This document shows positions 1-64,000 of a stretch of DNA of 64,000 nucleotides, piece by piece. Numbering within the stretch: the stretch's first letter is position 1; each line of letters begins with the position of its first letter. The DNA is from Stylophora pistillata (lineage: Eukaryota), in contig NW_019218437.1 in the NCBI RefSeq assembly GCF_002571385.2, positions 31,606 to 95,605 of the forward strand, in the 5' to 3' direction. The notes beneath the pieces were generated by a model. The model made no database searches. It was not told the origin of the DNA and saw only the letters and a list, made by a program, of their open reading frames with translations. Both the position numbers and the translations under genes were made by a program.

Positions 1-59
1 TTTGGCCGGACTGCATCAGCAGTTTACAAACAATTGAATGAAACTTATTTGAAGACCCC

Positions 60-368
60 CTCCCCCCAATTCCCAGTAAACAGGCCAGACCACATCACAG
101 TAATCTCGTGAGTGGGTTCTTTAACGTCCCCTGCCTAACCAAATTAACTAATTAATAGATGCAGGAGATGGGACCTACGGTTTATTCGTCCATATCCGAG
201 AAGACTAGAATGTCTATCCATTTCTTGATATTATAGAAAGGTAGCGCATTCTCCTCAGTTATTTTAAGACCTTGAGTGTTGGTCTGGCTGGGGCTCGAAC
301 GATCGACCTCGACCTCCCGCACAACAGTCCAGCGCTCTAACCAATTGAGCTAACTGGGAGGCAGTTAG
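60..368 (-). mobile_element. tRNA-derived SINE (family A)
   Basis: Minus strand has a tRNA-like head (TAGCTCAATTGG A-box, GTTCGAGCCC B-box). The body is shared with copies at 12830, 14001, 25240 and 44855. Confidence 0.8.
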
Positions 369-577
369 TAACATTTTAGTCAAATTGCCACCGGTGGCAA
401 TTTGACTTCAAGTGTTGGTGAGTTTTGTGATACTGAGTTTGTTGTGTTGGAAAATTGACTGTAAACCTTTGTAACAGTACAAGTCTTGTAGGTCACTATT
501 AATTGTTTTCTGTCAGGTAATGAGTTCTTGATTTATCCATGGTGTAAAATTATTTAAGTTTTCTGCTCCTTTCTTAG

Positions 578-3500
578 TATGATGACCCTAACGCTACTGT
601 GTCCAGCATTTTGGATGAACTTAAAAAACTGGTAAGACAAATGAGATGATTATTTGATCTTTACTCATTTGATTAATAATTGGTCACTAGATATCACTAG
701 ATATCATTTACTTTTTATTGGTCCTTTAATATGAGTGACTTTATTTCAGAATGTTGGAGTAGATTTTCCACCAGCAAAACTCAAAACAGGAACAGGAGAG
801 CAGGTAAATAAATATGCAAATCTTATCTAACTTAGTATTTTTTAAAAGATGTTCAGTTTGAGATGGTATAATAATGTAACTGACAGTACATCAAACATTA
901 CTAATACAAGGTGATTGTTTAGTATAGTCCAAGGATGAGGAGGTAAAAGTAAATTTGTGATTCAGCTTGTAATGTCCATTCTATGTAGTTCTCTTAATTG
1001 TATACAACTTGATCTGATTTTTAAAATACTTATTTTCTGATGTTTTTTAGGTTTGCTATGTAATTGATAAACTTGCAGACGAGGCCCTGAAAGTCAAGAA
1101 ATTTGGTTGGAAAAAGTATGTGTCCATATTATTACACGTCATTGTTTGCATTTGAGATGGTTTACAAATGTATGTGTGTTGTGATGAAAGCATAAAATAT
1201 TATTTTTTGTAATTTCCCAGGCCGCAACATGAACAGGAAGACTTTGAGGAGGAAACAATGGAAGATGATGAAGCTGAACTGACACTGAACAAAGTGGAGG
1301 AGGAAATGATGGTGAGAAAAACTGAAATCAAAATATTGGGTCTGCTCATAGCATGCAGGCATTTTCTTTTGAGCTTAGTTGATGTACATCATCTCTCTAA
1401 ATCTTACTTTTAGTTTTTTTATTTTCTTTTACCAGAGTTTTTATGCTTTTTTGGTTACAGTTGTATTTTTAATCTCTAACTTTTGCACTTCCTGTGGTAG
1501 GATGAAGCAGAGGAAGAAATTGAAGAAGAGGACAGTTATCTAGATCTGGCAGGAATGAAGCAGCAGTCACAAATGAATGTAATCAGAACTAGTTGGTGAA
1601 CATTGTTGATAAATGAATTCACCTCAGGGTCTAAAGCTTTATGTTTTTTGATGTGTTTGTTGTTCTGCAGGAGATTGCTGATTCATCAAAACCCGAGTCT
1701 GTGATGGAGTCAACTATTGACGCTGCTGAGTGGAAACTTGAAGTTGAAAGGGTTCTGCCATTACTGAAGGTTCACATTCGAACTGATAACAAGGTAAACT
1801 TCTCACAGTTTTTCCCATTTTTATTTTACCTTCAAACTTTTAAGCAGTCAAAGATATCTGATTGAAGTTCTGGTCAGTGGCAGGTTGGTTTAGGCAGGGT
1901 TGCCAATGGCATTTTACATCTGTTCCTTTATCTAGGATTGGAGGACGCATTATGAACAAATGCAACAACACAGTGAAGGAATTAAATCTTCTCTAACTGA
2001 GACAAAGGTATAGTTTCATCGGAACTTACCGATAGTTTAATTACCTTTTGCCTCTTTTAATTTAGGAATACTCCTTACTGTCTGTCATACAATTGCTATG
2101 ATGTTGGTTTAAAGAAAATTAATTGGTATGTCATCAACTAGTAATCCCCTCATTGATATTTTTCTCTATTCCTACTACTTGTCTGCTTGATATCGTATTG
2201 ATATTTTTTATGGAGAAATTTTGTCTTGGTCAATCATAGGAGTTAAAGTCTTAATTACAGAATGGTTACCTCACTGCCAGCTCATTTCTGTTCTGTATTC
2301 ACATTTTAACTAGTTACTATTTCTATCAGGGTCATCTTGACAAACTACACCATGAAATCAGTAGAACTCTTGAGAAGATAGGAAGTCGAGAAAAGTACAT
2401 CAATAATCAGGTACAACTTATTTAGACAAATGAGATGAATAAAAAGACATCAGAGTTTAGATTTAAATGTTTGTATGACTCAGTGATCATTTCTACATAT
2501 TGTTTATAACAGCTGGAACATTTGCTGCAAGAGTTTCGGAGTTTACAGGACACTTTAGCTGAGGTATGCTTGTTAGTATTAATTTTGCAGAGATTAAGTT
2601 CACCCAAGCTAGAGTTTTGACGTGTCTTGTTTTATTTGTGTGTCTCATCAGACTAAAGAACGTTACAAGCAAGGCTCTGGAGGGGTAACTGACCTCACTA
2701 AGTCATTATCACAGGTTTGTTTACTTGCAAAATTTTGGAATTTTTTTTCTCCATTTACCTGGTAACACAGGATTCTTGATGAATTATTTTTTGTTTAATT
2801 TGGAAGATCACAGAAGAACTTGAGTCTGTCAAAGCACAGATGGATGAAAGAGGAACAAATATGACTGATGCAGGTGAGGCACATACATTTTATCTTTGAT
2901 TTCATCATGCAACTTCAGTGATGGTGACTTGTGACAGCGGAACAAAGATCTCAAGTGTTGTCTTAATCATGTCATGCAGGTCCTTTAGTCAGAATAAAAC
3001 AAGCGTTGACAAGACTCAAACAGGAAGTTCAACAAATGGAAGTTCGTATAGGAGTGGTACGTTTGGCCATGTTTTTTGTTTGTTTGTTTTTTTTTTTCAC
3101 AATATACTTCAAAGACATGACAAATGACAAGTTGACTTGCTTCTCGTTGTGCTTTTTACGAGTTAAAAAGTGTGTCTTGACACTAAATACAGAAAATTCC
3201 AAGAGTTTAGAGAACTTCTTGCGGACAAGAGTTCGAATATTTATTAATCCAAAGACATAATGATTTTAGGCGTGACGCTTAGGGAATGGCAAATGGTAAA
3301 AATAAGCTGCTTTTTTTAACTTTCTTTACATTCCTTAAATCAACCCAGTAGAGTTATAAGAGGGCGAGAGCACACATTGTATTCAGTTCTCGCCATTTAC
3401 CGTGGAATTCTTGCTCTTAAGATGCTAAAACTGGTGAGTTAAGAAGTATGGAGTAACGTAAGCAGCATTTACTTGAAGATGTAAGTGCCTCCTTCAGTTC

Positions 3501-3723
3501 AACCGTGTAAATATCAAAACATCTGTTTTTGCTGTCCCTCGTTAAAAAACTCGGACATTTTTGTTCTTTACAGTGGTAGTTAATGGGCTCCTTACCTGTG
3601 TGTTTTTTGTAGGTTGAACACTCCCTTCTTGTCGCTAAAATCCGTGATCGGAGCGCCATTAGAGAAGACATGCAAGCCCCAGTCTCTGACGCGGCCACGT
3701 TTGGAGATTTCAAACCGTTTTAG
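578..3723 (+). CDS. IFT57: Intraflagellar transport protein 57, 3' part. Exons 578-631, 750-803, 1051-1115, 1221-1311, 1501-1578, 1671-1793, 1936-2007, 2330-2410, 2513-2563, 2652-2714, 2807-2873, 2980-3056, 3613-3723; 5' exons lie upstream of the window
   Basis: Manual GT-AG splice gives a continuous frame: YDDPNATVSSILDELKKL..DFPPAKLKTGTGEQVCYVIDKLAD..EWKLEVERVLPLLKVHIRTDNKDWRTH..LEKIGSREKYINNQLE..MDERGTNMTDAGPLVRIKQALTRLKQEVQQMEVRIGVVEHSLL..KPF*. These motifs are diagnostic of IFT57/HIPPI. Confidence 0.96.
2040..2254. mobile_element. Degenerate TTAA-flanked MITE in an IFT57 intron
   Basis: About 210 bp bounded by ttaa. From memory it resembles an abundant coral piggyBac-like MITE (ctccttactgtctg..atacaattg..gaaattttgtcttggtca...ggagttaaag). 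Confidence 0.55.
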
Positions 3724-5700
3724 AGTGGACCGATCGTCACGTTACTTGTGGAAGAGACGCAACCAAGCAGAGGAGGAAATATTACTGTAAAGTAACAATG
3801 GGACGCCGCCAATTATAACATTAATCGCCTTTTTTAGTTCAATATTTATTACGAGAGGACTTTCAGCCATACTACGAAAGAAAATGAAGGAGTGGAACTC
3901 TAACTGGAAAAGAGTCAAAGCTGCAAGGAAGTTGGTGTAGGATGTGGCGTTTAATGTTCGTTAAACGAGGCCGTAATTTATTTTTCTCGCAAACCAAAAT
4001 GACAACTTTCTCTGTAGAACCCACCAACAATAATTTAACGACTTCTGTACGAAATTGTAGTGTCATGTTGTAGTTTTCGTGATTACAGTTCGTAGAACTT
4101 TCCTTGTTATGATCAATAGATTACCCTCTCCTCCCCTCAGTTTTTCGTTTAATATAATGGCGTTGATCCGATAACTGTTAAATTAAAATGTGGTTTAAAA
4201 CAGTGGCTTGTGTGGTTTTACTTTAGCTCTTTATTTCAATTGAAGGTTGATCGTGTTCTGATCTTAACAAAGCCGTGAAAAACTATTAAAACCCAATCTT
4301 GATTATAACGTGACATCTTACAATCACCTTTGACAATTCATCTACCTGTGTGGTCGATGCCTTCTTAATTTTTTTCTGAATAATACTGAAGGATTGTCTT
4401 GTTTCCCTTCGCGTTTTCTCTGTTCAAGTCGTTGTAAAGTACAGTTTATTCTGGTTTTGAGGACGTAAAGGCCGAGAGTCTTGTAGTGTTAAGGTTTCTT
4501 TTGACGGTCATGTTATTTATTTGTACCTCGACCATTTGGAACAGTTCCGATTCCACATCTGTCTCTCTCAACGTCTTCTGCTTTGAGTGAATACAACATT
4601 TCTCGATTATCTGATTAAAATATTTAAGTGACTCAATGATAAGTTATCTGTTAACGACCGCAAGAACTTAATTACGAGCAATTTTGTTCTGAGGGGAAAA
4701 ATAAGGTGTCCTGAAGGTAATTTTTATAAAAAAAAAATCTTACTTATTAAGCCCTCTTCCAAACACGGTGAGGGCATGAAAGAGAGTGCAACAATTGTAA
4801 TTCGATGGACCTCGACATTAGCCACCAAAGCTGCAACAAAAATATCAAGTCATTAGCAGTAAATTAAGCTATTTATGACTTCGGAAAGATCTCCGTAATA
4901 AGCTAGTATTTATTAAACAAAATCCACACGAAACACAAATAAGTCACTTAACAGATGGGGCGCCGTGAGTTCATCTCGTCCCGTTGAAAAATAACGATAA
5001 AGGGGGAAAGTTAAACCATAAACTAAATATGATTAGCTTTCATTTAATATAAATATCGCCAAACTGAAATATTAGTTTTGAACTCAAATTTGTGCTTTCT
5101 CGTGGGTGGTACGCTTGACTTGGAAACAGTTTGAAATTTTCTTCAGATATTTTTTATGAGTGTCGATTGCAGGACTTCGTAATTGCCTGTGGTTTCAATG
5201 TTGTGAAGATTAAATTCAAATCTTTCTACATCGCTTGAAAAACAAGGCGGTACCACACTTGATGAGTATCTGCCTTTCCATATTTCTCTATCATTTTAAA
5301 AATTCTAGCCTCAAATGGAAAAAATAACGACAATTTTCTTGAACAATTATTACTATAAGACACAGTCTGTTTACAAGGGCTCCTAAGTGGCTTTACAATT
5401 TAGAAAATCCATTGTACAATGGAACAGTTGGCTCCAGAAGCAATGCGGCAACATTTAGCAGGAGACAATTTATACTTCAACTCTGCGGGAACGCAAAAGC
5501 GCCGCGCGCTCAGCGCTCACCATCGAATTATGACAACTGCTGGAAGTTTTTTCCAACTGAAACCTCCTGGATTCACTCCCTGAAAATGTGACTCCAGTTT
5601 ATCTTAAACCTCAACGCAATTAGCTCAAACTGAAATAAATTACTTTTATGATTGAAAAGGATTACAGCAATGATCTAGCGGTTGTTTTCTCTATCAGGGT

Positions 5701-5736
5701 GATCAAAGGCGTGAGGCATTTATCAAAGGCTTTGAC
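5701..5736. promoter_or_regulatory. Paired TCF/LEF-type sites about 520 bp upstream of the homeobox ATG
   Basis: ATCAAAGGC occurs at 5702 and 5722 (20 bp spacing), in a region also rich in TAAT/ATTA motifs. Confidence 0.35.
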
Positions 5737-6240
5737 AGCCTTGAAAAGAACTTAATTAATAAGGAAATAATTTCTCAGCGGGACAAAGCGACAATGACTT
5801 TTCCTGTAGTAAAATGGAAGCACACGGTATTTTCATTTCCACTATGCACACGCCCAGCTTGAAATTTTACTTTAATAATGTTTGAAATTATATTCAGTGG
5901 TGTTTTGTAGCGCACGGTATGGGTTTATATGAAGACAAATAAATGAATAGTGGGGGGTGAAAGTTTAGCTTAATAAACTGTCACTAATAACGCAAATAAT
6001 AAAGTTGATTAATCAGTGATGAGCTTTTAATTAACAATCCTTAAGAACTAATATCATTGTTTTGCTTGTGTGTTTTATTAACCGTGTCAAAATCCACTTG
6101 CTGTATATCACAGCGCGTCTGAGAAGTCTTGTAAGGCAAGGATCTGGTGGAGATTTTGCTCTGTCTAAAGTGAACTGTAATCAGTGTAATTTTAGAGCAA
6201 AAATGCGACAATTAATTGCATAAGTGGGTATTGATATTCC

Positions 6241-8420
6241 ATGGAAGGCCTTACTGCTTTCGTGTCCCGATTCGACAAGACAAAGCCACAAGATTCATCA
6301 GCCACACAAGTTGATGATGGCCGAGTACTGGACAACGCTTCATCCTCTTCAAGTTCAGTGACTCTGCCATTCAGCATTGCAGAGATTTTGAGCGATAAGC
6401 GAAATGAGTCAAGGAAAAAGGAAACCGAAGACATAAGAGATGAGATTAGACAGTATACTGTTCAAGGTAGGAATGAAACATAACCAAAGATACGGAACCT
6501 TACGTCTTTGTTCACTGTAAAGTCGAGTGTAGAACGATCTTACTTTTGTTCAAAATACTTTCAGAACAACAATTTTTTTTTTTACCAGAAAATAATTCCT
6601 AAACGTACAACGGGACATTTGCTGTGTCATTATTTAAACATAACATGAAAGGCTAGAAGGGAGTCACTGCGTTCTTGAAATTCTCATTAAAAGGTTTAAC
6701 ATGTGAAATAATTTATAATTTGTCCTTATCGAATGATGTATGGACCAACATGGCCCTGCCAATATAAACAGTAATAATATTTATCTGCTAATCATAGATT
6801 AAACAGTTCACCGCAAAGCAGACAACAGAATTTCTTAGTTTATATTGAAAATCTCGATTTCTACTCAGTTCACTTTTGATTGATAACGGAACGACCATTT
6901 GGTAGAAAAATTTCATCTTTTTTTCGAGTAACAAAAAAAAAAAAAAAAAAACAATTTAAATAACGAACTTTTAGCCCAACCATACTTCAACAACTGGCGA
7001 GACTAAATACATACTTCAGTATTTATAAAAATTTTCCAACCCTTTTGTTAGAGTCACAGAGCGAAGAATAGTTTGAAGGAAAAAGGAAACTATATTGAGG
7101 TTTAGTGAGGGGATCCCTGGATTCTTGGCAGAAAACGCTTACATTGTAGCACATTCAACGTTCCTGGTTTCTCTTTTATGCCGAGATTACTCAAAAAGCA
7201 CGTTGCATCTTAAAAAAGCACGTTGTATCTTAAACAGTGCGTATAAAGTCCAAGAAGAACGTATATAATGACGGTTCACACCAAATTTTGATAAATGTAT
7301 TTTTCTTAAGGAACTGTTACATTAGATAAATATCTGTGTATCATTTCTACAGGTTTTGACGAATCACCCAGACGAACACACCGATGCAAACCTCCACGAA
7401 ACAGAAAAAACTTCACAAGAGAACAATTGCGAGAACTAGAGAAACTGTTTGATCAGACACATTACCCAGACGCCTTGACGCGCGAAACACTGGCTAAGAG
7501 GATGGGCCTCTCAGAAGCTAGAGTTCAGGTAACTCGCTATGTGAGTTCTTGTGAGATTATTTTGAAATAAAAACAAGTTCAAAACTGATTTGACATGTTC
7601 TGGGCTACCACAACGAATTCAGTTGAAATCAATCTTAACTTACAGCTTTTTTGAATACCATATTTCCTCGAATAAGCGACCTCCCCAGATAATAAATTAC
7701 CCCCCCCTCCTAGGGCCGTAATGTCAAACAGGCGCCCTCTCGAATAAGCACTCCCTTCCTCCCTCACCTCAAATAGTTGGGCTACAAGTAGTTCTACCCT
7801 AATAGTTTCTATTGCCATTTTATCTCTAACTTTGCTTCAATCAAGTGAATCAGTATAGGAGAATGATGAGCGCCCTCGTTTCAACAAGCTCCCATCTTTT
7901 TCGCTTAACTTTTCAAACAAGCGCCAAGGTAGATCAAAAAAAGAAAAAGTAGCAATCAAGATAGTTTGATTTAATCTCATATTTCCAGTGTAGAACATAA
8001 AAGTAAGGGAGGGCACTTAAAACGAGGGGAGAGGACCGGGATTAGGTTAGATGCTTTGATGACACGCATCTCCTTGTGACGATACCGCTGGTTTATTCAC
8101 AGATCTGGTTTCAAAACCGTCGGGCTAAAAGTCGTCGGCAAGAAGGACCGAATCAGAGGGGATTCGTTGTCCCGGTAACCCCAACATACAAACCACCAAA
8201 TCACGTGACTCCGCTAAGACAAGAAACATCTATGGCACCATTTACCCATGGTGCTTATAGAGCCGGTTGTGTTGAGCATCTGTGCATGTGTAACCACGCC
8301 AGTTTTGTTACCAGTGTTAGTCAGGTTGATTATAATCGTCAGTTTAACCAACAGACAAGCATCGAGGATCTGAGACGTAAAGCTCGGTACCACAGCTGGG
8401 GAGGGCACAACGTACACTGA
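6241..8420 (+). CDS. PRD-class (Q50) homeobox protein, Shox-like, about 239 aa. Exons 6241-6466, 7353-7528, 8103-8420
   Basis: Homeodomain [46 protein letters not shown]|[14 protein letters not shown], with the typical PRD-class intron between residues 46 and 47. N-terminal eh1 motif FSIAEIL (6370-6390). C-terminal OAR-like [14 protein letters not shown] (8352-8393). Splice phases are compatible. Confidence 0.92.
7656..7925. mobile_element. Tc1/mariner (pogo-like) MITE fragment in homeobox intron 2
   Basis: Begins TA|ccatatttcctcgaataagcg and contains repeated cgaataagc / aacaggcgccc / aacaagcgcc subterminal motifs. Confidence 0.5.
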
Positions 8421-8982
8421 GCCCGCGTTTTCATCTCCTTGGATCAGTGGAGAGAGGATTTACTTCAAAGAGGGGTGTTTCATTTTATTTTGATGTCCAG
8501 GAAACTAAAATCGAAGCCATTTGTTTTCATCATCCACCAAACTGTCCGAAATTATGTTCTCGTAGATTTAAAAAATAGCTTTAATTCAATATTCTTTACA
8601 TTATAACCCTAGGAAAATACTACAATTAACTGAAATCATGCGCTTCATTCAATAAAAAAATCGCTTTTTCTCTGAAAAAATCAATGACAAAACACCACGC
8701 TGATATGGCTCTTCAATGGACTGTCATAAATCAGCGCAAAAACTAAATTTTACAATTATCTGATGGACTCGACAGTTCAAATGATGTCCCTACACCAGAA
8801 AATGAACTATCCAAACTACAGCTTCAGATGCATAAAAAAATTATCAAAAATAGTGTTTTTGATCTAAACCCACGATTCCATGTATCCAGCCTATACTAAT
8901 TAAATATCTTGCGTTGCAATCAGTGCAAATAAATAATATTTAAAAAAATTCTAAAGTTAGAAAAGTTAGAAAAGCACTAGGT

Positions 8983-11900
8983 TTACTTCTTTATTTTCTT
9001 CTGTGGTTTTCCTCCCATGGCTGTCTGTAGTTTTCTCTCAGCTTGTTGCTTGCGCTCATGTTCGGGTTTGTTCGCATGCTGCTCCAGTTGTGCTTGTTTC
9101 TCTTCCAACTTTTTCTTGAACAAGTTCAGTCGCTCCAGACAGTTACTTTTCTGTAGATTAATGGATTCTAGCGAAGCCTTTGCAGTGGTTATCTTGGTGG
9201 TTGTTTGTCGAACGGCATTCTTATGCTGGGCATGCTCTATGCTACCCTCCGCTGACTCCCTAAAGAGGTCTGTTTGAGCCAACAGCTCTTGTTCTAGTTC
9301 CCTTAGGTTTGTAGTGACATCAAGAGACTGCCTGGAGAGCTGGGCGAATTCCTGATTCAAGCTGTCTACCGTGTCTTGCATGTCATTAACTTGAACCTGT
9401 AATAAAAGTTCACAAAGTCAATACTCGTCAGAATCCCAAAGGTTGGGTGTTTTTGTCTCTTCATGAATCTGTGTGATAAGTTTTCAGATTACAAATGTAT
9501 TTCCTTTCTTTCTTGCTTGGCCAATATGAAAAAATATTTCAATGAGTTGAATTGTCTTCAGTAGTTTTATTCATAACTCACTAATGTTTCGTAAAAAAAT
9601 TTGCTTTAAGGTAAAAAGGAAAAAAAAAAGGGGCTTAAAATCATACTCCTAGTCTAACTGATACTAGATACGGTACCTTAATTCTTTAATATTCTTTTAA
9701 TATTAATATTATAATTTACGTGAACATACCTCAAGGAAGGTCTTATAAAGGTCCTCGTCATCCTTACGCTGTGTAGGTTTCCCAGATATTGGCAAACTAG
9801 TGCCATTGCGTGACAGAGCCTGGGCGCGGGAAACCTGTCGAGACACTCCACGTGACAACAAATTACTACGTGACTGCGCGTATCGTGACACCGGTCTCTC
9901 CTTAGCTTGTGGTCCTTGTAGCTCGTGTAGTCGTTTATCAATAAACTCTTCTGTGCCTTGAAGACGGGCGTGGGACGCCTTCTCTTCCACATCACCCAAG
10001 AAAGATCTCAACTTAGACTCTACAGCAAAGTTACTGTACTTGGATAAACGTTCCACAATACCTTCATGTGTAAAATGTACGCCCTCTTTGTTCGCACCCC
10101 GCAAAAGCTTGACGTCCAAGAGTCCTTCCACCATATTCTCCTTGTCGGCCTCAGTATGAGCATCACCAAATACGGACTCCAGCAGAACACGGCTGGCGCT
10201 TTCCAAATCGTCGCTTGCAGGAAGTGAGGACAGTGTGCGCGCAAGCGCAGAGGAACGCCTATATCGTGCAAAGAACAAGTCATCGCAAATTACGGCTAGG
10301 GCGAGATGGAACTCTTTCATAAATCCCGGATGGGAGTCGTCCCGTAAGTCTCCGCAAGCAATGTGCGCGAGGCAGTGAACCAGAACCAAAATAAACTCTC
10401 CAACGTTGTCCATTCGTTCGGTTCGCACGTACAAGATACGATTGTTTGCGTCGTAGAAAAAGGAATTCCTGTAAGCGTTCCTTTGAAGATGAGGGTTTGG
10501 AGGCAACTTATCGGCGAGCAAAAGGGTGACTGGAAGATGATGACAATGAACGGCGAGTAAATCGACAATGAAAGAGCCAAACTTGTATGTAACGAACGCC
10601 CGAGCAGGCAGCGTGTTCAGATCAACTGGGACAAGTTCATCGTCCCCTGCCCACAAAGTGTCATCCTTGATGTCAATATAACCTTCACCCGGTGCTGAGA
10701 AACAAATCAAGGCAAATAGGTTACACAACATCATTTACCGAGTAACTCAACTGTGTAGACTCTTACTGCTGCTTGATAGAACTTTCGTATCCCATCAATA
10801 CATGAGCGTTTCAATACAGGTTAATTTGGTTTTATTGACTACGTTGATAATGTAAATTGACCACCGTAAGAGAGTTTAAAAGCTAATTTTGNNNNNNNNN
10901 NNNNNNNNNNNNTACCAACTTACCCCATTTATTGTTTTGAATAAATATTACTTTAAAAACCAAAAGATTCAAACTATCCCTTCGACTTAGTTTAGTTTCG
11001 AAAACTTTTTCTCAGGTGCCTTAAAATAATATTTTTCGCTTTCCATTACTAAAAGTATCTATTTCCACTTACCCGGAGCACCAAACTGTCCTGCTTTACC
11101 AGCGCCACCACTCACCAGTGATTTGATGCTTTCGATCTTTTGGTACAGCGGCGATGACAGCAACAGCGATGCTAGTTCACCTTCGCTTAAAGGAGCTGCT
11201 AATCGATAACTCTCCGGCATTAGTCGACCTTGTTGCATAGGGGGTGGGGTAGCTTCAGATTCGATAGTAGCAGCTACAAGGTTATCGACATGAATGCTTT
11301 CCTTTAAAGCGATCACTTCTTCAGCTTGAGCTCGATCGCGCTCAGATTGTATTTTTTCTTCAAACTCTTTCTTCTCCTCTTCGTTTCGAGTTGTAAGTTC
11401 AGCCACCTTAGCCTGCCGTTTTGCGTCACGTCTTTTCTTCAGACGTTCCTCCAGTGAGCTCTGCATCCTCATTCTATCTGCATCCATTTTGTTCATCAAT
11501 TTAGCCAAGTCTTTGCTGTGCTCTTTCAATATGGCTTCTTGGTCTTCCTTTGAAGCCCCCTGTTTGCTCATTTTATCCATTTCTTGTTTGACTTTTGCCT
11601 TCTTTTCCTTCAGTAGGGCTTCTTTGCGAGTATTTAGAGCTAAGATTGCCTTTTCGTTCTTTTTCTGTTCTTCTTCTGCCTCTTGTTCTAGTTGTTTGTC
11701 AAACGCCTTGAGTTCCTCTTCAAACTTTTGTTGTTGCTCGGCTTCAAATGCTGAAGTGAAAAACAGATGCAAATCAGATAGGTTTCGGATGAAAACCGAT
11801 TCAATTGAATCATATGAATTCCTTACGCTTTCTTAACCTGAGCTAAAACGTGAAAGATACTAACTTTCATTTTCCTGTTTGAGTTTCAGTTCATTCTCCG

Positions 11901-63100: not shown

Positions 63101-63299
63101 AGTTCTACCTCTTTCACATTCTTTGCAGCTCTCAGATTTAGTTTCATTTGCATAAAATCCAGAAGGGCATGGCTGTGGACTGGCAGTGATCAAAAGAGGA
63201 CAAAAAAATCCAACAGGACATTCATAACATGACATGCTTGCTTCAGAAGCAAAATATCCTCTTCCACATGGTACAGGGGCCTCACTCTTATTAGTGCAT
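8983..63299 (-). CDS. Giant Cys-rich (GCC2_GCC3/ephrin-receptor-like repeat) type I transmembrane protein with coiled-coil tail; about 68 exons and 22.9 kb of coding sequence in the window; 5' end outside the window; contains 7 in-frame stops (recoded or disabled allele)
   Basis: Consecutive minus-strand exons with GT-AG boundaries and matching phases translate as CPxGxYC/CxxGTY repeats from 63299 to about 19960. Then come a juxtamembrane domain, a TM exon and coiled-coil exons, ending KKIKK* at 8983. Confidence 0.9.
10835..10885 (-). mobile_element. Fragment of the Penelope-associated repeat family, next to an assembly gap
   Basis: ccaccgtaagagagtttaaaagct is the reverse complement of the motif following the hammerhead-like core at about 37818-37840. 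Confidence 0.45.
12830..13105 (-). mobile_element. tRNA-derived SINE (family A), abutting a gap
   Basis: Near-identical to 14105-14383; pol III A and B boxes on the minus strand. Confidence 0.85.
13106..14000. other. Assembly gap (others at 10892-10912, 35451-35540 partly called, and 49004-49676)
   Basis: Runs of N. The exons on either side of each gap splice in phase, so no missing exon is required. Confidence 0.98.
14001..14383 (-). mobile_element. tRNA-derived SINE (family A), apparently full length with (TAAA)n tail
   Basis: tRNA-like head at about 14310-14383, conserved body, and a (TAAA)-type tail at 14001-14025 on the minus strand. Confidence 0.85.
17455..17772. mobile_element. Non-autonomous hairpin-ended DNA element (family B, possibly Crypton-like)
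   Basis: Internal inverted repeat cttattaaccaagc...gcttggttaataag. Three copies in the window (17455, 23588, 41168). Confidence 0.8.
18433..18620 (-). CDS. Transmembrane-helix exon of the giant gene
   Basis: Translates PQNLSPDWAVIWGMIVFMLVCIIMLVIAVIIWRPKSVGRFPVRALRPKYK: a hydrophobic stretch of about 24 aa followed by basic residues (positive-inside rule). Flanked by tttag and gtaag. Confidence 0.9.
19963..63299 (-). CDS. Ectodomain-coding exons of the giant gene: tandem Cys-rich repeats, including a ~2.96 kb exon at about 29439-32402 and a ~1.2 kb exon at about 39086-40285
   Basis: ORF track and manual translation show recurring CPAGxYCP..G...P..CP.GT[YF]N...G....C..C..G.YC...G...P.G.C..G.[YF]C units, with many NxS/T sequons. 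Confidence 0.92.
22280..22593. mobile_element. Non-autonomous element with a terminal ~115 bp hairpin (possibly Crypton-like)
   Basis: aacaattattccac..gttggatatgagatgat..gccaac / gttggc..atcatctcatatccaac..gtggaataattgtt is an imperfect palindrome. Confidence 0.7.
23588..23823. mobile_element. Family B element, internally deleted copy
   Basis: Matches the 17455 copy but lacks the segment between the two cgagggccg direct repeats. Confidence 0.8.
25240..25444 (-). mobile_element. SINE family A, 5'-truncated
   Basis: Body matches 14110-14310; the tRNA head is absent. Confidence 0.8.
25541..26334. mobile_element. PIF/Harbinger-like (PHIS) non-autonomous transposon
   Basis: TIRs AGAGACCTTAAGATAC..GAAATCGGTGTAC / GTACACCGATTTC..GTATCTTAAGGTCTCT, with a 3-bp AAT TSD on both sides. 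Internal 21-bp tandem repeat (gtttacccggggtagacacca) at about 25643-25693. Confidence 0.8.
27900..28204 (+). mobile_element. Element with a tRNA-Thr(AGT)-like core flanked by 54-bp direct repeats
   Basis: Direct repeats 27900-27953 and 28151-28204 differ at 1 position. The core 28012-28084 folds as a degenerate cloverleaf. Confidence 0.75.
28012..28084 (+). pseudogene. tRNA-Thr(AGT)-like pseudo-tRNA within a repeat
   Basis: Acceptor GGCTTGT/ACAGGCC, D-arm GCTC-AATTGGTA-GAGC, anticodon loop CTAGTAT. The T-arm is degenerate (TTTGAGT, poor stem). Confidence 0.6.
35180..36247. mobile_element. PIF/Harbinger-like non-autonomous transposon
   Basis: TIRs AGGGAGCTTACGAATCGATGACTT / AAGTCATCGATTCTTAAGCTACCT, flanks ACT/GCT, and gacgac-rich subterminal motifs. 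Confidence 0.7.
37543..37902 (+). mobile_element. 5'-truncated Penelope-like retroelement with a minimal hammerhead-like motif
   Basis: Encodes PNHFKQHMAICGLSLHLGSTESRNNLEQKLVFQTSSLNPTEINERFSFH*, resembling the C-terminal end of a Penelope GIY-YIG ORF. 12-bp TSD TGAAGAAAACTA at 37531-37542 and 37903-37914. Hammerhead-like core at 37787-37820. Confidence 0.75.
41168..41482. mobile_element. Family B element, opposite orientation
   Basis: Reverse complement of the 17455 copy. Confidence 0.8.
42475..42858. mobile_element. Hairpin-ended non-autonomous element (family C)
   Basis: About 195 bp imperfect palindrome at 42662-42857 (aaacaccacagcgtacactattgagttatggatgcac...gtgcatccataactcaatagtgtacgctgtggtgttt). 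A degenerate inverted copy lies at about 46095-46380. Confidence 0.75.
44855..45065 (+). mobile_element. SINE family A, 5'-truncated
   Basis: Reverse complement of the body of the 14001 copy. Confidence 0.8.
46095..46380. mobile_element. Family C element, degenerate
   Basis: Shares aagaagctagagtc..ctct and ctcaata..gctgtggtgttta with 42475-42858, plus the reverse complement of 42480-42565. Confidence 0.6.
51365..52049. mobile_element. Kolobok-like non-autonomous DNA transposon with ~200 bp TIRs
   Basis: TTAA on both sides (51361-64, 52050-53). TIRs begin GGTTAC..CACCTTCAGGGGTGTCTC and extend about 200 bp. A TTAA TSD with purine-starting TIRs fits Kolobok rather than piggyBac. Confidence 0.8.
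53235..53900 (-). mobile_element. Possible degenerate LINE (CR1/L2-like) 3' fragment
   Basis: Minus strand shows AATAAA followed by a short (CTA)-type tail near 53240-53257 and a weak F.G.WN.L..DLK remnant. Confidence 0.3.
56915..57860. repeat. Minisatellite, ~60 bp unit, about 15 copies
   Basis: Unit gatgagttgtc(t/c)gtaccgagtactaaggtactaacgtactaaacaaatgaa(g/t)aacaagcc repeated in tandem. Confidence 0.93.
58120..58140 (+). repeat. Short interstitial (TTAGGG)3 tract
   Basis: gggttagggttagggttagg. Confidence 0.8.
58371..58722. mobile_element. MITE with 36-bp imperfect TIRs
   Basis: tggtttcacaacctgtggtgtaatccagctgttaag ... cttgacagctggattacaccccatgttgagaaacca. Confidence 0.7.
59540..59985. 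repeat. Tandem repeat, ~100-110 bp unit, about 4 copies
   Basis: Recurring cagtcctttaatcgaa..ctagtacg..caagtcattcatg..gttagtaagctagtac. Confidence 0.8.
60332..60418. repeat. Near-perfect 87-bp palindrome
   Basis: aaggcaaggtgagaaaaatattttgggggccaca...tgtggcccccaaaatatttttctcaccttgcctt, with an extra ccaca duplication in the left arm. Confidence 0.9.
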
Positions 63300-64000
63300 C
63301 TATTGAAAATATTACAATAGTACACACTGTTAATATGCAGATTAAGTTGGTACAAAAAGAAAACAACAACAGACAAGTAAAACCACCCATATATAACTAA
63401 AGCAATTGCTCAATCCCAAGTTTAAACCTCATTAAAATGTTAATTAAAAACATAAATTTTAACTTATTTCCACTTTAAATAAGACACTAATAGTACACCA
63501 TCCAATGTCATCATTTTAAAAGAATCCACCTAGAATCTTCACTTTCTATCCAGGTGTTTGGGCAAGAATAACAAATGTTTAAAAATTTTAAGGGACATGT
63601 TAAAAAAAAAAAAACATATCACTGTGAGGGTACTGAGTATGAGGCATCTTAACAGTCACAGACTTTTGAAGATAGAAATCTCCAGCACTATCATACTAAC
63701 TGGATGAAAAAATAAATGAATGAATGAATGCACAAATGAAGTGAGTTTCAATAGACTGTTGAACAATTTGGTGATTTAACCAGCATGTCCTTGGACTGAC
63801 TAGAGGACACCATGTCACATAACTCACCATAATATTGATAAGCTGTTAAAAATCTGCCAAATTATATGAGCAGATGATATGAATGCAGTATGACGTCAAC
63901 ACATCTAAGAAGTTTTAATGTAAAGAAGAACAAACAAATGCTTCGATAAAGAATGGATGATGACGTCAGTGGACAGTTATAATGCAGCTTGCATCTGTGA

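What the first reader, a model, noticed from the sequence alone, without database searches (positions are those of the whole stretch)
8983..63299. Giant Cys-repeat receptor gene with seven in-frame stops, four of them UGA exactly at conserved cysteines, and no frameshift
Seen: splicing about 68 exons (about 7,600 codons) by hand gives intact GT-AG sites and a preserved frame. In-frame stops occur at 55533 (TAA), 50600 (TGA), 50148 (TGA), 46946 (TAG), 38665 (TGA), 26553 (TGA) and 16221 (TGA). In every case the repeat pattern continues undegraded after the stop. Four of the six ectodomain stops replace a repeat Cys. Known: UGA aligned to Cys is the signature of selenoproteins, and Sec insertion in eukaryotes needs a 3'UTR SECIS. 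Inference: (a) an undescribed multi-Sec or UGA-to-Cys recoded giant surface protein; (b) general readthrough or exon-skipping rescue; or (c) a very recently inactivated allele, since Cys codons are abundant here and one substitution from TGA. The TAA, the TAG, the non-Cys TGA and the absence of an obvious SECIS favour (c) or (b), but the Cys bias and lack of indels deserve testing.
Basis: partly seen in the sequence, partly recalled or inferred. Interest (0 to 1): 0.9.

Follow-up and report, generated by a model that had tools for sequence, protein, structure and literature searches.

The report
Reference-only stop codons, giant coral gene
A giant cysteine-repeat surface-receptor gene of a stony coral carries seven real in-frame stop codons in this reference assembly. 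They are single-letter changes that relatives lack and, at the three sites laid with reads, most other colonies lack, so the gene is ordinary and conserved and shows no sign of a new stop-codon recoding system.

Summary
All seven stops are in the sequence, in frame and inside exons. Three of those exons are confirmed by a spliced mRNA contig. No frameshift was found wherever an orthologue allows a test.

They are not recoding sites. In the orthologous gene of a related coral genus (about 85% DNA identity, up to 13 samples) all seven sites are sense codons: AGA, TGT, TGT, TAT, TGT, TGT, TGC. That orthologue has no stop in about 43,000 codons.

Reads covered three sites in other colonies of the same species. 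They read TGT at 50148 and 50600 and AAA at 55533-55535. One DNA sample is probably heterozygous for the TGA at 50148. One mRNA sample appears to carry the TAA.

The gene is under strong purifying selection (dN/dS 0.14), evenly before and after every stop. The window lineage shows no excess of missense changes. No SECIS was found, no second gene copy, and all nine tRNA-Cys-like genes read GCA.

Best reading: reference-specific single-base nonsense changes, some real segregating alleles and some possibly consensus errors of a haploidified draft assembly. The cysteine bias (5 of 7, P about 0.003, post hoc) remains unexplained. The scan has noted similar private stops in other genes of this assembly.

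The parts
8983..63409 (-). Giant multi-exon gene. It has an ectodomain of Cys-rich Ephrin-receptor-like repeats, a furin-like site, one transmembrane helix and a long cytoplasmic tail with coiled coils. The 5' end is not defined; the last ORF ends at the stop codon 8983-8985.
   Evidence: Pfam PF07699 hits at or just under the cut-off. Giant homologues of up to 7,808 aa are collinear with it. Comparative gene model. Last ORF 9381-8983.
55533..55535 (-). In-frame TAA in exon 55634-55511 (124 nt), in a linker of the repeat (CPSTSQ*PTRQC).
   Evidence: DNA contigs of two other colonies read AAA (Lys). The RNA contig X15 shows no other letter here, so it probably carries TAA. The orthologue has AGA (Arg).
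50600..50602 (-). In-frame TGA at a repeat Cys (CPERQS*) in exon 50922-50551 (372 nt).
   Evidence: X2, X7 and X15 all read TGT. The orthologue has TGT.
50148..50150 (-). In-frame TGA at a repeat Cys (KAQEE*YVCP) in exon 50245-50063 (183 nt).
   Evidence: X7 and X15 read TGT. X2 has an unresolved two-branch bubble exactly here (depth 4.7 of 9.4), so it is probably a TGA/TGT heterozygote. The orthologue has TGT.
46946..46948 (-). In-frame TAG replacing Tyr (HDST*ACWKGHYC) in exon 47104-46907 (198 nt).
   Evidence: The orthologue has TAT. No reads were laid here.
38665..38667 (-). In-frame TGA at a repeat Cys (TGEE*PEGHFC) in exon 38765-38380 (386 nt).
   Evidence: The orthologue has TGT in nine samples. 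No reads were laid here.
26553..26555 (-). In-frame TGA at a repeat Cys (CDPGKY*EGS) in exon 26725-26372 (354 nt).
   Evidence: The orthologue has TGT in nine samples. A distant homologue aligns across it.
16221..16223 (-). In-frame TGA in the cytoplasmic tail (LGDKF*AMV), exon 16310-16212 (99 nt), three codons before the donor site.
   Evidence: The orthologue has TGC (Cys) in four samples. The exon has dN = 0 over 32 codons.
50063..55634 (-). Eight exons confirmed by a spliced mRNA contig: 55634-55511, 55194-54998, 54789-54664, 54492-54295, 52811-52381, 51290-51019, 50922-50551, 50245-50063.
   Evidence: Joints of the X15 contig, set to GT-AG. One frame of 634 codons with three stops.
29439..32402 (-). 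Largest exon (2,964 nt, stop-free), used for homologue searches and rate tests.
19237..19251 (-). Conserved polybasic RRRRR (furin-like) site. About 100 residues after it are identical in the orthologue.
18528..18590 (-). The only strongly hydrophobic 21-residue stretch in the exons from 19700 down (the only ones scanned); predicted transmembrane helix.
   Evidence: Kyte-Doolittle scan, mean 3.2.
13106..14000 (.). Assembly gap that probably hides one or two coiled-coil exons. Frame continuity cannot be tested here.
   Evidence: The corresponding orthologue DNA (L010 13673-14468) holds coding-looking ORFs.
49004..49676 (.). Assembly gap inside an intron.
   Evidence: The RNA contig joins exon 50063 directly to exon 47712. 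The orthologue has no sequence between them.

Best explanation
This is an ordinary, functional, strongly conserved single-copy gene for a giant type-I membrane protein made of Cys-rich Ephrin-receptor-like repeats. The seven stops are young single-base nonsense substitutions specific to the reference sequence: TGT/TGC to TGA five times, TAT to TAG once and AAA to TAA once. They are read as ordinary stop codons. The allele seen in the other colonies at the three sites laid with reads, and in the sister genus at all seven, encodes Cys, Tyr and Lys (Arg in the sister genus). The set is most likely mixed. At least one or two are real nonsense alleles segregating in a very polymorphic species, in which a 7,000-codon gene offers a very large target. 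The rest are either further private alleles of the sequenced heterozygous colony, frozen into a haploidified mosaic, or consensus errors of the draft assembly. Shown: the stops are present, they are not conserved, most other colonies lack them, the gene is constrained, and no recoding machinery was found. Inferred: the split between real alleles and errors, and that a product of the reference haplotype is truncated or removed by nonsense-mediated decay.
For: Orthologous loci from coral metagenome scaffolds, collinear including introns, have sense codons at 7 of 7 sites. They have no stop in about 43,000 codons from 13 samples. Conspecific contigs read TGT at 50148 and 50600 and AAA at 55535, and the mRNA contig is correctly spliced. 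dN/dS against the orthologue is 0.14 (dS 0.32), the same before and after every stop, and there are no frameshifts. With two outgroup loci over 3,426 codons, the window branch has 113 nonsynonymous and 223 synonymous changes against 97 and 174 on the orthologue branch, so constraint is not relaxed. In the large exon the count is 24 against 17 derived residues. No SECIS was found at Rfam gathering score in the whole window or at E up to 10 (5 for bases 1-6200) in bases 1-10000. The gene is single-copy in the assembly. All nine tRNA-Cys-like genes have anticodon GCA. Signs of real alleles: an X2 bubble exactly at 50148, the window's letter kept by X15 at 55535, and six of 16 exonic window variants shared with X15. 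Rough numbers: with synonymous diversity near 1.6%, about 18 nonsense differences would be expected between two haplotypes of this gene if such changes were neutral. At an assumed survival of a few percent (my own rough figure, no tool result), about one is expected, and a consensus error rate of 0.2-0.4% would add two to four. The assembly matches the Stylophora pistillata draft in size. That draft was built with khmer normalisation and ALLPATHS-LG HAPLOIDIFY=True (PMC5730576).
Against: Seven stops in one gene is far above any normal load of real nonsense alleles. A purely random error or mutation process fits poorly. Five of seven stops are at Cys codons, where 19% is expected (P about 0.003). 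None of 536 orthologue Cys codons is missense in the window, although random change gives four to seven Cys missense changes per Cys stop. No excess of missense was found on the window branch. These statistics are post hoc, and the finding was picked for this very feature. The evidence that two stop alleles occur in other samples rests on a summary table with hidden rows. Four stops (46946, 38665, 26553, 16221) were never checked in reads of the same species.
Confidence: 0.65

Rival explanations
1. All seven stops are pure consensus errors of the draft assembly and exist in no living colony. They would be substitution errors favoured by digital normalisation, haplotype merging and gap filling in an internally repetitive gene.
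For: At 50600 all three other samples read TGT at full depth. The window is about 1.1-1.3% from X2 and X7, whereas by my rough estimate from the shown rows (9 of 40 differ) those two are only about 0.3-0.4% apart. Window-derived changes are poor in transitions, 3 of 11. Other notes of this scan report many private in-frame stops in otherwise intact genes of this assembly, including essential ones (unchecked by me). Assembly method as in PMC5730576.
Against: An X2 bubble lies exactly at 50148, and X15 keeps the window's letter at 55535. The overall spectrum of differences is natural, 54% transitions in X2 against 51% between genera. An error rate high enough for seven stops (about 0.6%) predicts about eight Cys missense changes and about 44 extra missense changes in the polarised part; none were seen. 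Long intronless HSP70 genes of the same assembly are clean.
Confidence: 0.2
2. The stops are recoded. UGA at Cys positions is read as selenocysteine or as Cys by near-cognate readthrough, and UAG/UAA as Tyr/Lys, so TGY-to-TGA changes are nearly silent in this coral and drift as if synonymous.
For: Five of seven stops are TGA at Cys codons (P about 0.003). No Cys missense change accompanies the four to five Cys stops. TGT-to-TGA changes on the window branch occur at roughly the synonymous T-to-A rate (my estimate). All seven original residues (Cys, Tyr, Lys) are ones that, to my knowledge, near-cognate tRNAs insert at those stops. An mRNA that apparently carries the TAA is abundant enough to assemble.
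Against: No SECIS was found. All tRNA-Cys-like genes have anticodon GCA. TAA and TAG cannot be Sec. The stops are not conserved in the sister genus or in most other colonies. Only one TGA is followed by C, the leaky context. The Cys bias is post hoc in a protein that is 9% Cys. Efficient readthrough of all three stops would also extend normal proteins.
Confidence: 0.04
3. The gene is a recently dead or dying unitary pseudogene, or a long-standing null haplotype, in this species, and it is collecting stops by neutral decay.
For: Seven stops in one sequence. A probable nonsense allele is shared between samples. The window has a 6-bp in-frame insertion relative to the other colonies.
Against: dN/dS is 0.14 everywhere. 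The ratio of nonsynonymous to synonymous changes on the window branch is no higher than on the sister branch. There are no frameshifts. No Cys missense was seen where about eight are expected for this many stops. The mRNA is expressed and correctly spliced in another colony.
Confidence: 0.05
4. The stops are real alleles made harmless by skipping of the repeat-module exon that carries them, as seen with nonsense mutations in in-frame exons of other giant modular genes.
For: Five of the seven stop exons have lengths divisible by three: 372, 183, 198, 354 and 99 nt.
Against: The background is 25 of 52 exons, so this is not significant. The exons of 124 and 386 nt would shift the frame if skipped. 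The only mRNA contig includes all three tested exons and shows no alternative joints.
Confidence: 0.04

Closest known systems
Genomic stop codons in draft eukaryotic assemblies (gene models that need a base substituted at a genomic stop) and private nonsense variants of a reference individual
   Same: Isolated single-base in-frame stops in otherwise intact, conserved, expressed genes. They are absent from relatives and from most other individuals, and no indels accompany them.
   Different: The density is unusually high (seven in about 22 kb of coding sequence), and the stops show an unexplained bias towards Cys codons.
Selenoproteins with many Sec codons (selenoprotein P type), in which UGA aligns with Cys in homologues
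   Same: UGA at positions that are Cys in homologues, and several UGAs in one reading frame.
   Different: No SECIS. The UGAs are not conserved even within the species. TAA and TAG are also present. The protein is a structural Cys-repeat receptor and not a redox protein.
Giant Ephrin-receptor-like (PF07699) repeat proteins of many animals and some protists, named automatically as notch-like, MEGF6/11-like, zonadhesin-like or chitin-binding-domain proteins
   Same: The same Cys-repeat module (C-x-x-C-P-x-G-x-[YF]-C). Giant size (homologues up to 7,808 aa), partly collinear, with hits also in the cytoplasmic tail.
   Different: No member with a tested function was identified here. The C-terminal cytoplasmic domain matches no Pfam family, and a language-model search gave nothing usable.
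Common nonsense polymorphisms in dispensable or balanced genes (from my own knowledge: human ACTN3 R577X, FUT2 W143X, TLR5 R392X)
   Same: A stop allele that seems to occur in more than one individual and in mRNA (the TAA at 55533, and probably the TGA at 50148).
   Different: Those cases have one common stop per gene. Here there are up to seven in one sequence, in a gene under strong constraint.

Membership tests
Eukaryotic selenoprotein gene (Sec recoding of UGA) | SECIS element in the 3'UTR of the same mRNA | tested here: not met
   Rfam 15 found no SECIS family at gathering score in the whole window, or at E up to 10 (5 for bases 1-6200) in bases 1-10000, on either strand.
Eukaryotic selenoprotein gene (Sec recoding of UGA) | The in-frame UGA is kept in orthologues or within the species, with Cys only in more distant homologues | tested here: not met
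   The sister genus has TGT or TGC at all five sites in up to nine samples. Other colonies of the same species read TGT at both TGA sites tested.
Eukaryotic selenoprotein gene (Sec recoding of UGA) | Only UGA is recoded | tested here: not met
   Two of the seven stops are TAA and TAG.
Programmed stop-codon readthrough or suppressor-tRNA decoding | A conserved stop with a conserved leaky context, or a tRNA with an anticodon that matches a stop codon | tested here: not met
   The stops are not conserved. Only one TGA is followed by C. All nine tRNA-Cys-like genes of the assembly have anticodon GCA. tRNA-Tyr and tRNA-Lys genes, and tRNA modifications, were not surveyed.
Pseudogene (neutral decay) | Relaxed constraint (dN/dS near 1) and frameshifting indels | tested here: not met
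   dN/dS is 0.14. There are no frameshifts. The window branch has 113 nonsynonymous and 223 synonymous changes against 97 and 174. No Cys missense was found.
Ephrin_rec_like (PF07699) repeat protein family | Pfam PF07699 domains above the curated score | tested here: inconclusive
   Single exons score 19.7-22.6 bits against a cut-off of 23.1. Many homologues carry a precomputed PF07699 hit. The repeat pattern is plain by eye.
Type-I membrane receptor | Signal peptide, one transmembrane helix and a cytoplasmic tail | tested here: inconclusive
   One transmembrane-like helix at 18590-18528, with a tail downstream. The N-terminus and signal peptide were not found in the window.

The most novel reading that the evidence does not exclude
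In this coral, UGA at cysteine codons (and perhaps UAG at Tyr) is decoded often enough, by near-cognate tRNA or by an unrecognised Sec-like route, that TGY-to-TGA changes behave almost as synonymous polymorphisms. That would explain why stops pile up at Cys codons without a single Cys missense change, in this and other genes of the same genome.
Probability: 0.04. Interest if true: 0.85.

Novelty: already known. Interest (0 to 1): 0.25.

Why it matters
The practical point is a warning. This coral reference carries single-base premature stops in conserved genes, which can be mistaken for selenocysteine or readthrough sites, or for gene loss. Gene models, selenoproteome scans and gene-loss calls made on this assembly should be checked against reads from other colonies. 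The biological residue is small. At least one nonsense allele seems to segregate and to be present in mRNA in a gene that is otherwise tightly constrained. The stops favour Cys codons more than chance predicts, and cheap read mapping would settle whether that means anything.

Tried and rejected
1. Misplaced hand splice sites. Several stops lie next to GT or AG motifs, but frame-by-frame reading, the RNA contig and the orthologue place all seven inside exons.

2. An artefact that swaps a base for its complement (A<>T, C<>G). Exonic window-derived changes looked enriched for these. However, A<>T is already 16-19% of intron and third-codon-position differences between genera (14% at first and second positions), and the full spectra of the window and orthologue branches are alike.

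3. A second copy or haplotig without stops. The gene is single-copy in the assembly; only an intronic dispersed repeat matched elsewhere.

4. Genome-wide error rate from conserved families. The 'stops inside' reported for HSP70 and dynein matches were intron spill-over, and the HSP70 exons are clean. This says little about the error rate.

5. Protein fragments of the same species in the large protein collection. None above 93% identity was found, in hits or in cluster members, so the four remaining stops could not be checked within the species.

6. Raw RNA reads of run X21. About 2% of the run was read, and only repeats were covered, not the exons.

7. Naming the C-terminal cytoplasmic domain. 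Pfam gave nothing, and the protein atlas gave only weak unrelated hits.

8. A suppressor tRNA-Cys. None was found.

9. My first gene-finding pass over-fitted. The second pass is still wrong around 55.6-53.6 kb, where I used the RNA joints instead.

10. A bacterial promoter and terminator scan of the 3' region was irrelevant.

Searches were made exon by exon, by reference. Exons were joined only inside local scripts, to count frames and stops.
Full report
WHAT IS THERE

The window (40% G+C, with N gaps) holds one giant minus-strand gene. It is built from Cys-rich repeats of the form C-x-x-C-P-x-G-x-[YF]-C. These give Pfam Ephrin_rec_like (PF07699) hits just under the cut-off.

A scan of 1.84 billion representative proteins found over 11,000 relatives. 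Some are giants of up to 7,808 aa and are partly collinear with the window, with hits also in the cytoplasmic tail.

My comparative gene model has 72 exons and 7,255 codons. It is approximate, and it is wrong around 55.6-53.6 kb, where I replaced it with RNA evidence. The protein has:
- a conserved RRRRR furin-like site (19251-19237);
- a block of about 100 residues identical to the orthologue;
- one transmembrane-like helix (18590-18528);
- a long tail with coiled coils that ends at 8983.

The assembly has 397.6 Mb in 5,513 pieces. This fits the Stylophora pistillata draft of 400.1 Mb before contaminant removal, built with khmer normalisation and ALLPATHS-LG HAPLOIDIFY=True (PMC5730576). Earlier notes of this scan name the same species. 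The identification is an inference.

All seven stops are present and in frame, and the repeat pattern continues after each. I first suspected misplaced splice sites, because GT and AG motifs lie nearby. That was wrong.

A 9,410-nt spliced contig from a polyA RNA run of the same species (X15) defines GT-AG introns. Eight exons (55634-55511 to 50245-50063) read as one frame of 634 codons with exactly the three reported stops. The other four stop exons are collinear with the orthologue and have conserved splice sites.

Five stops, not four, replace Cys codons, because the cytoplasmic TGA at 16221 is TGC in the orthologue. No frameshift against the orthologue was found; two apparent cases were nucleotide-alignment noise.

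THE GAPS (the program asked for this test first)

- 49004-49676 is intronic. The RNA contig joins exon 50063 to exon 47712.
- 35452-35540 and 10892-10912 fall where the orthologue has only intron.
- 13106-14000 corresponds to orthologue DNA with one or two coiled-coil ORFs. Exons are probably hidden there, and the frame across it cannot be tested.
The 5' end was not found.

THE STOPS ARE NOT CONSERVED

The large exon led to orthologous loci on coral metagenome scaffolds and Logan contigs. They are about 85% identical in DNA and collinear through introns, and they probably come from a sister genus.

| Window stop | Orthologue codon |
|---|---|
| TAA 55533 | AGA |
| TGA 50600 | TGT |
| TGA 50148 | TGT |
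| TAG 46946 | TAT |
| TGA 38665 | TGT |
| TGA 26553 | TGT |
| TGA 16221 | TGC |

Across 13 samples and about 43,000 aligned codons the orthologue has no in-frame stop, against six in about 5,900 aligned window codons.

WITHIN THE SPECIES

One call of read laying was allowed, on 49700-55699, with two DNA runs (X2, X7), one RNA contig run (X15) and one raw RNA run (X21, which gave no exon coverage).

- At 50600 all three read TGT.
- At 50148, X7 and X15 read TGT. X2's contigs break exactly there into two equal branches (4.7 of 9.4), most simply a TGA/TGT heterozygote.
- At 55535, X2 and X7 read AAA (Lys). X15 shows no other letter, so its mRNA most simply carries the TAA.

Rows were hidden in that table, so a third allele at either site cannot be excluded; I judge it unlikely. 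Six of 16 exonic window variants recur in X15, so the window's haplotype is largely natural. No run held more than 72% of the window's words, which corresponds to about 1% divergence. None is clearly the source of the window's haplotype.

THE GENE IS ALIVE

- dN/dS against the orthologue is 0.14 (dS 0.32, dN 0.045), with no trend along the gene or after any stop.
- With two outgroup loci over 3,426 codons, the window branch has 113 nonsynonymous and 223 synonymous changes. The sister branch has 97 and 174. The large exon gives 24 against 17 derived residues. Constraint is therefore not relaxed.
- Of 536 orthologue Cys codons, 532 are Cys in the window, four are TGA and none is missense.

NO RECODING MACHINERY

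- No SECIS was found at Rfam gathering score in the window, or at E up to 10 (5 for bases 1-6200) in bases 1-10000.
- All nine tRNA-Cys-like genes of the assembly have anticodon GCA.
- There is no second copy of the gene.

HOW TO READ IT

Neutral decay is refuted by the constraint tests.

What remains is reference-specific nonsense changes. The arithmetic is roughly as follows.
- Synonymous diversity is near 1.6% and nonsense changes are 4.9% of coding mutations. Two haplotypes of this gene would then differ by about 18 stops if stops were neutral.
- At an assumed survival of a few percent (my own rough figure), about one real nonsense difference is expected.
- A consensus error rate of 0.2-0.4%, which my missense tests cannot exclude, adds two to four.
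- A mixed origin is therefore statistically acceptable.

Two features do not fit a random process. Five of seven stops are at Cys codons where 19% is expected (P about 0.003). There is no Cys missense change, where four to seven per stop would be expected. This finding was chosen for follow-up because of that coincidence, and the protein is 9% Cys, so I discount it. I still record it as unexplained.

Other notes of this scan report private stops in many intact genes of this assembly. Examples are TGA at an Fe-S Cys of MOCS1A, three TAG at Tyr in another giant gene, and three stops in TTK. I did not check these. They point to a property of the reference rather than of this gene.

I tested and dropped a 'complement-swap' error signature.

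LIMITS

VERDICT

The recoding reading is not supported. This is an ordinary conserved gene whose reference copy carries young, non-conserved nonsense substitutions, some real alleles and some perhaps errors. Interest is low, with a small open question about the Cys bias.

Noticed in passing
window 28012-28084 (+): Rfam tRNA match (38.1 bits, above the gathering score) inside an intron of the giant gene. ARAGORN did not call it, so it may be a tRNA-derived repeat or a degenerate tRNA gene.
   Followed up: partly
window about 37540-37905: Intronic dispersed repeat of about 300-400 nt, with more than 50 copies at 82-97% identity across the assembly. Some copies lie in inverted pairs.
   Followed up: no
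window 51300-52050: Intronic stretch with contig depths hundreds to thousands of times those of the flanks in every run, RNA included. This is a high-copy repeat, and contigs break at its edges (51359 and 52054).
   Followed up: no
window 51065: The window has six extra bases (two codons, in frame) in exon 51290-51019 relative to all three other samples of the same species.
   Followed up: partly
window 35452-35540: A stretch peppered with short N runs between single bases. It looks like ambiguity codes in a low-complexity intronic tract, not a sized gap.
   Followed up: no
window 18829-19251: A conserved RRRRR furin-like site, followed by about 100 residues that are 100% identical between the two coral genera, just outside the membrane. 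This is the most conserved part of the protein.
   Followed up: partly
window 50923-51018: A very short GT-AG intron of 96 nt, confirmed by the mRNA contig.
   Followed up: yes
window 9709-10734: The C-terminal cytoplasmic domain (92% DNA identity to the orthologue) matches no Pfam family. Distant giant homologues share it.
   Followed up: partly
window 53317-53953: A haplotype block in which sample X2 matches the window at eight shown variable sites while X7 carries other letters. X7's contig there has about half the depth of its neighbours, which suggests heterozygosity.
   Followed up: no
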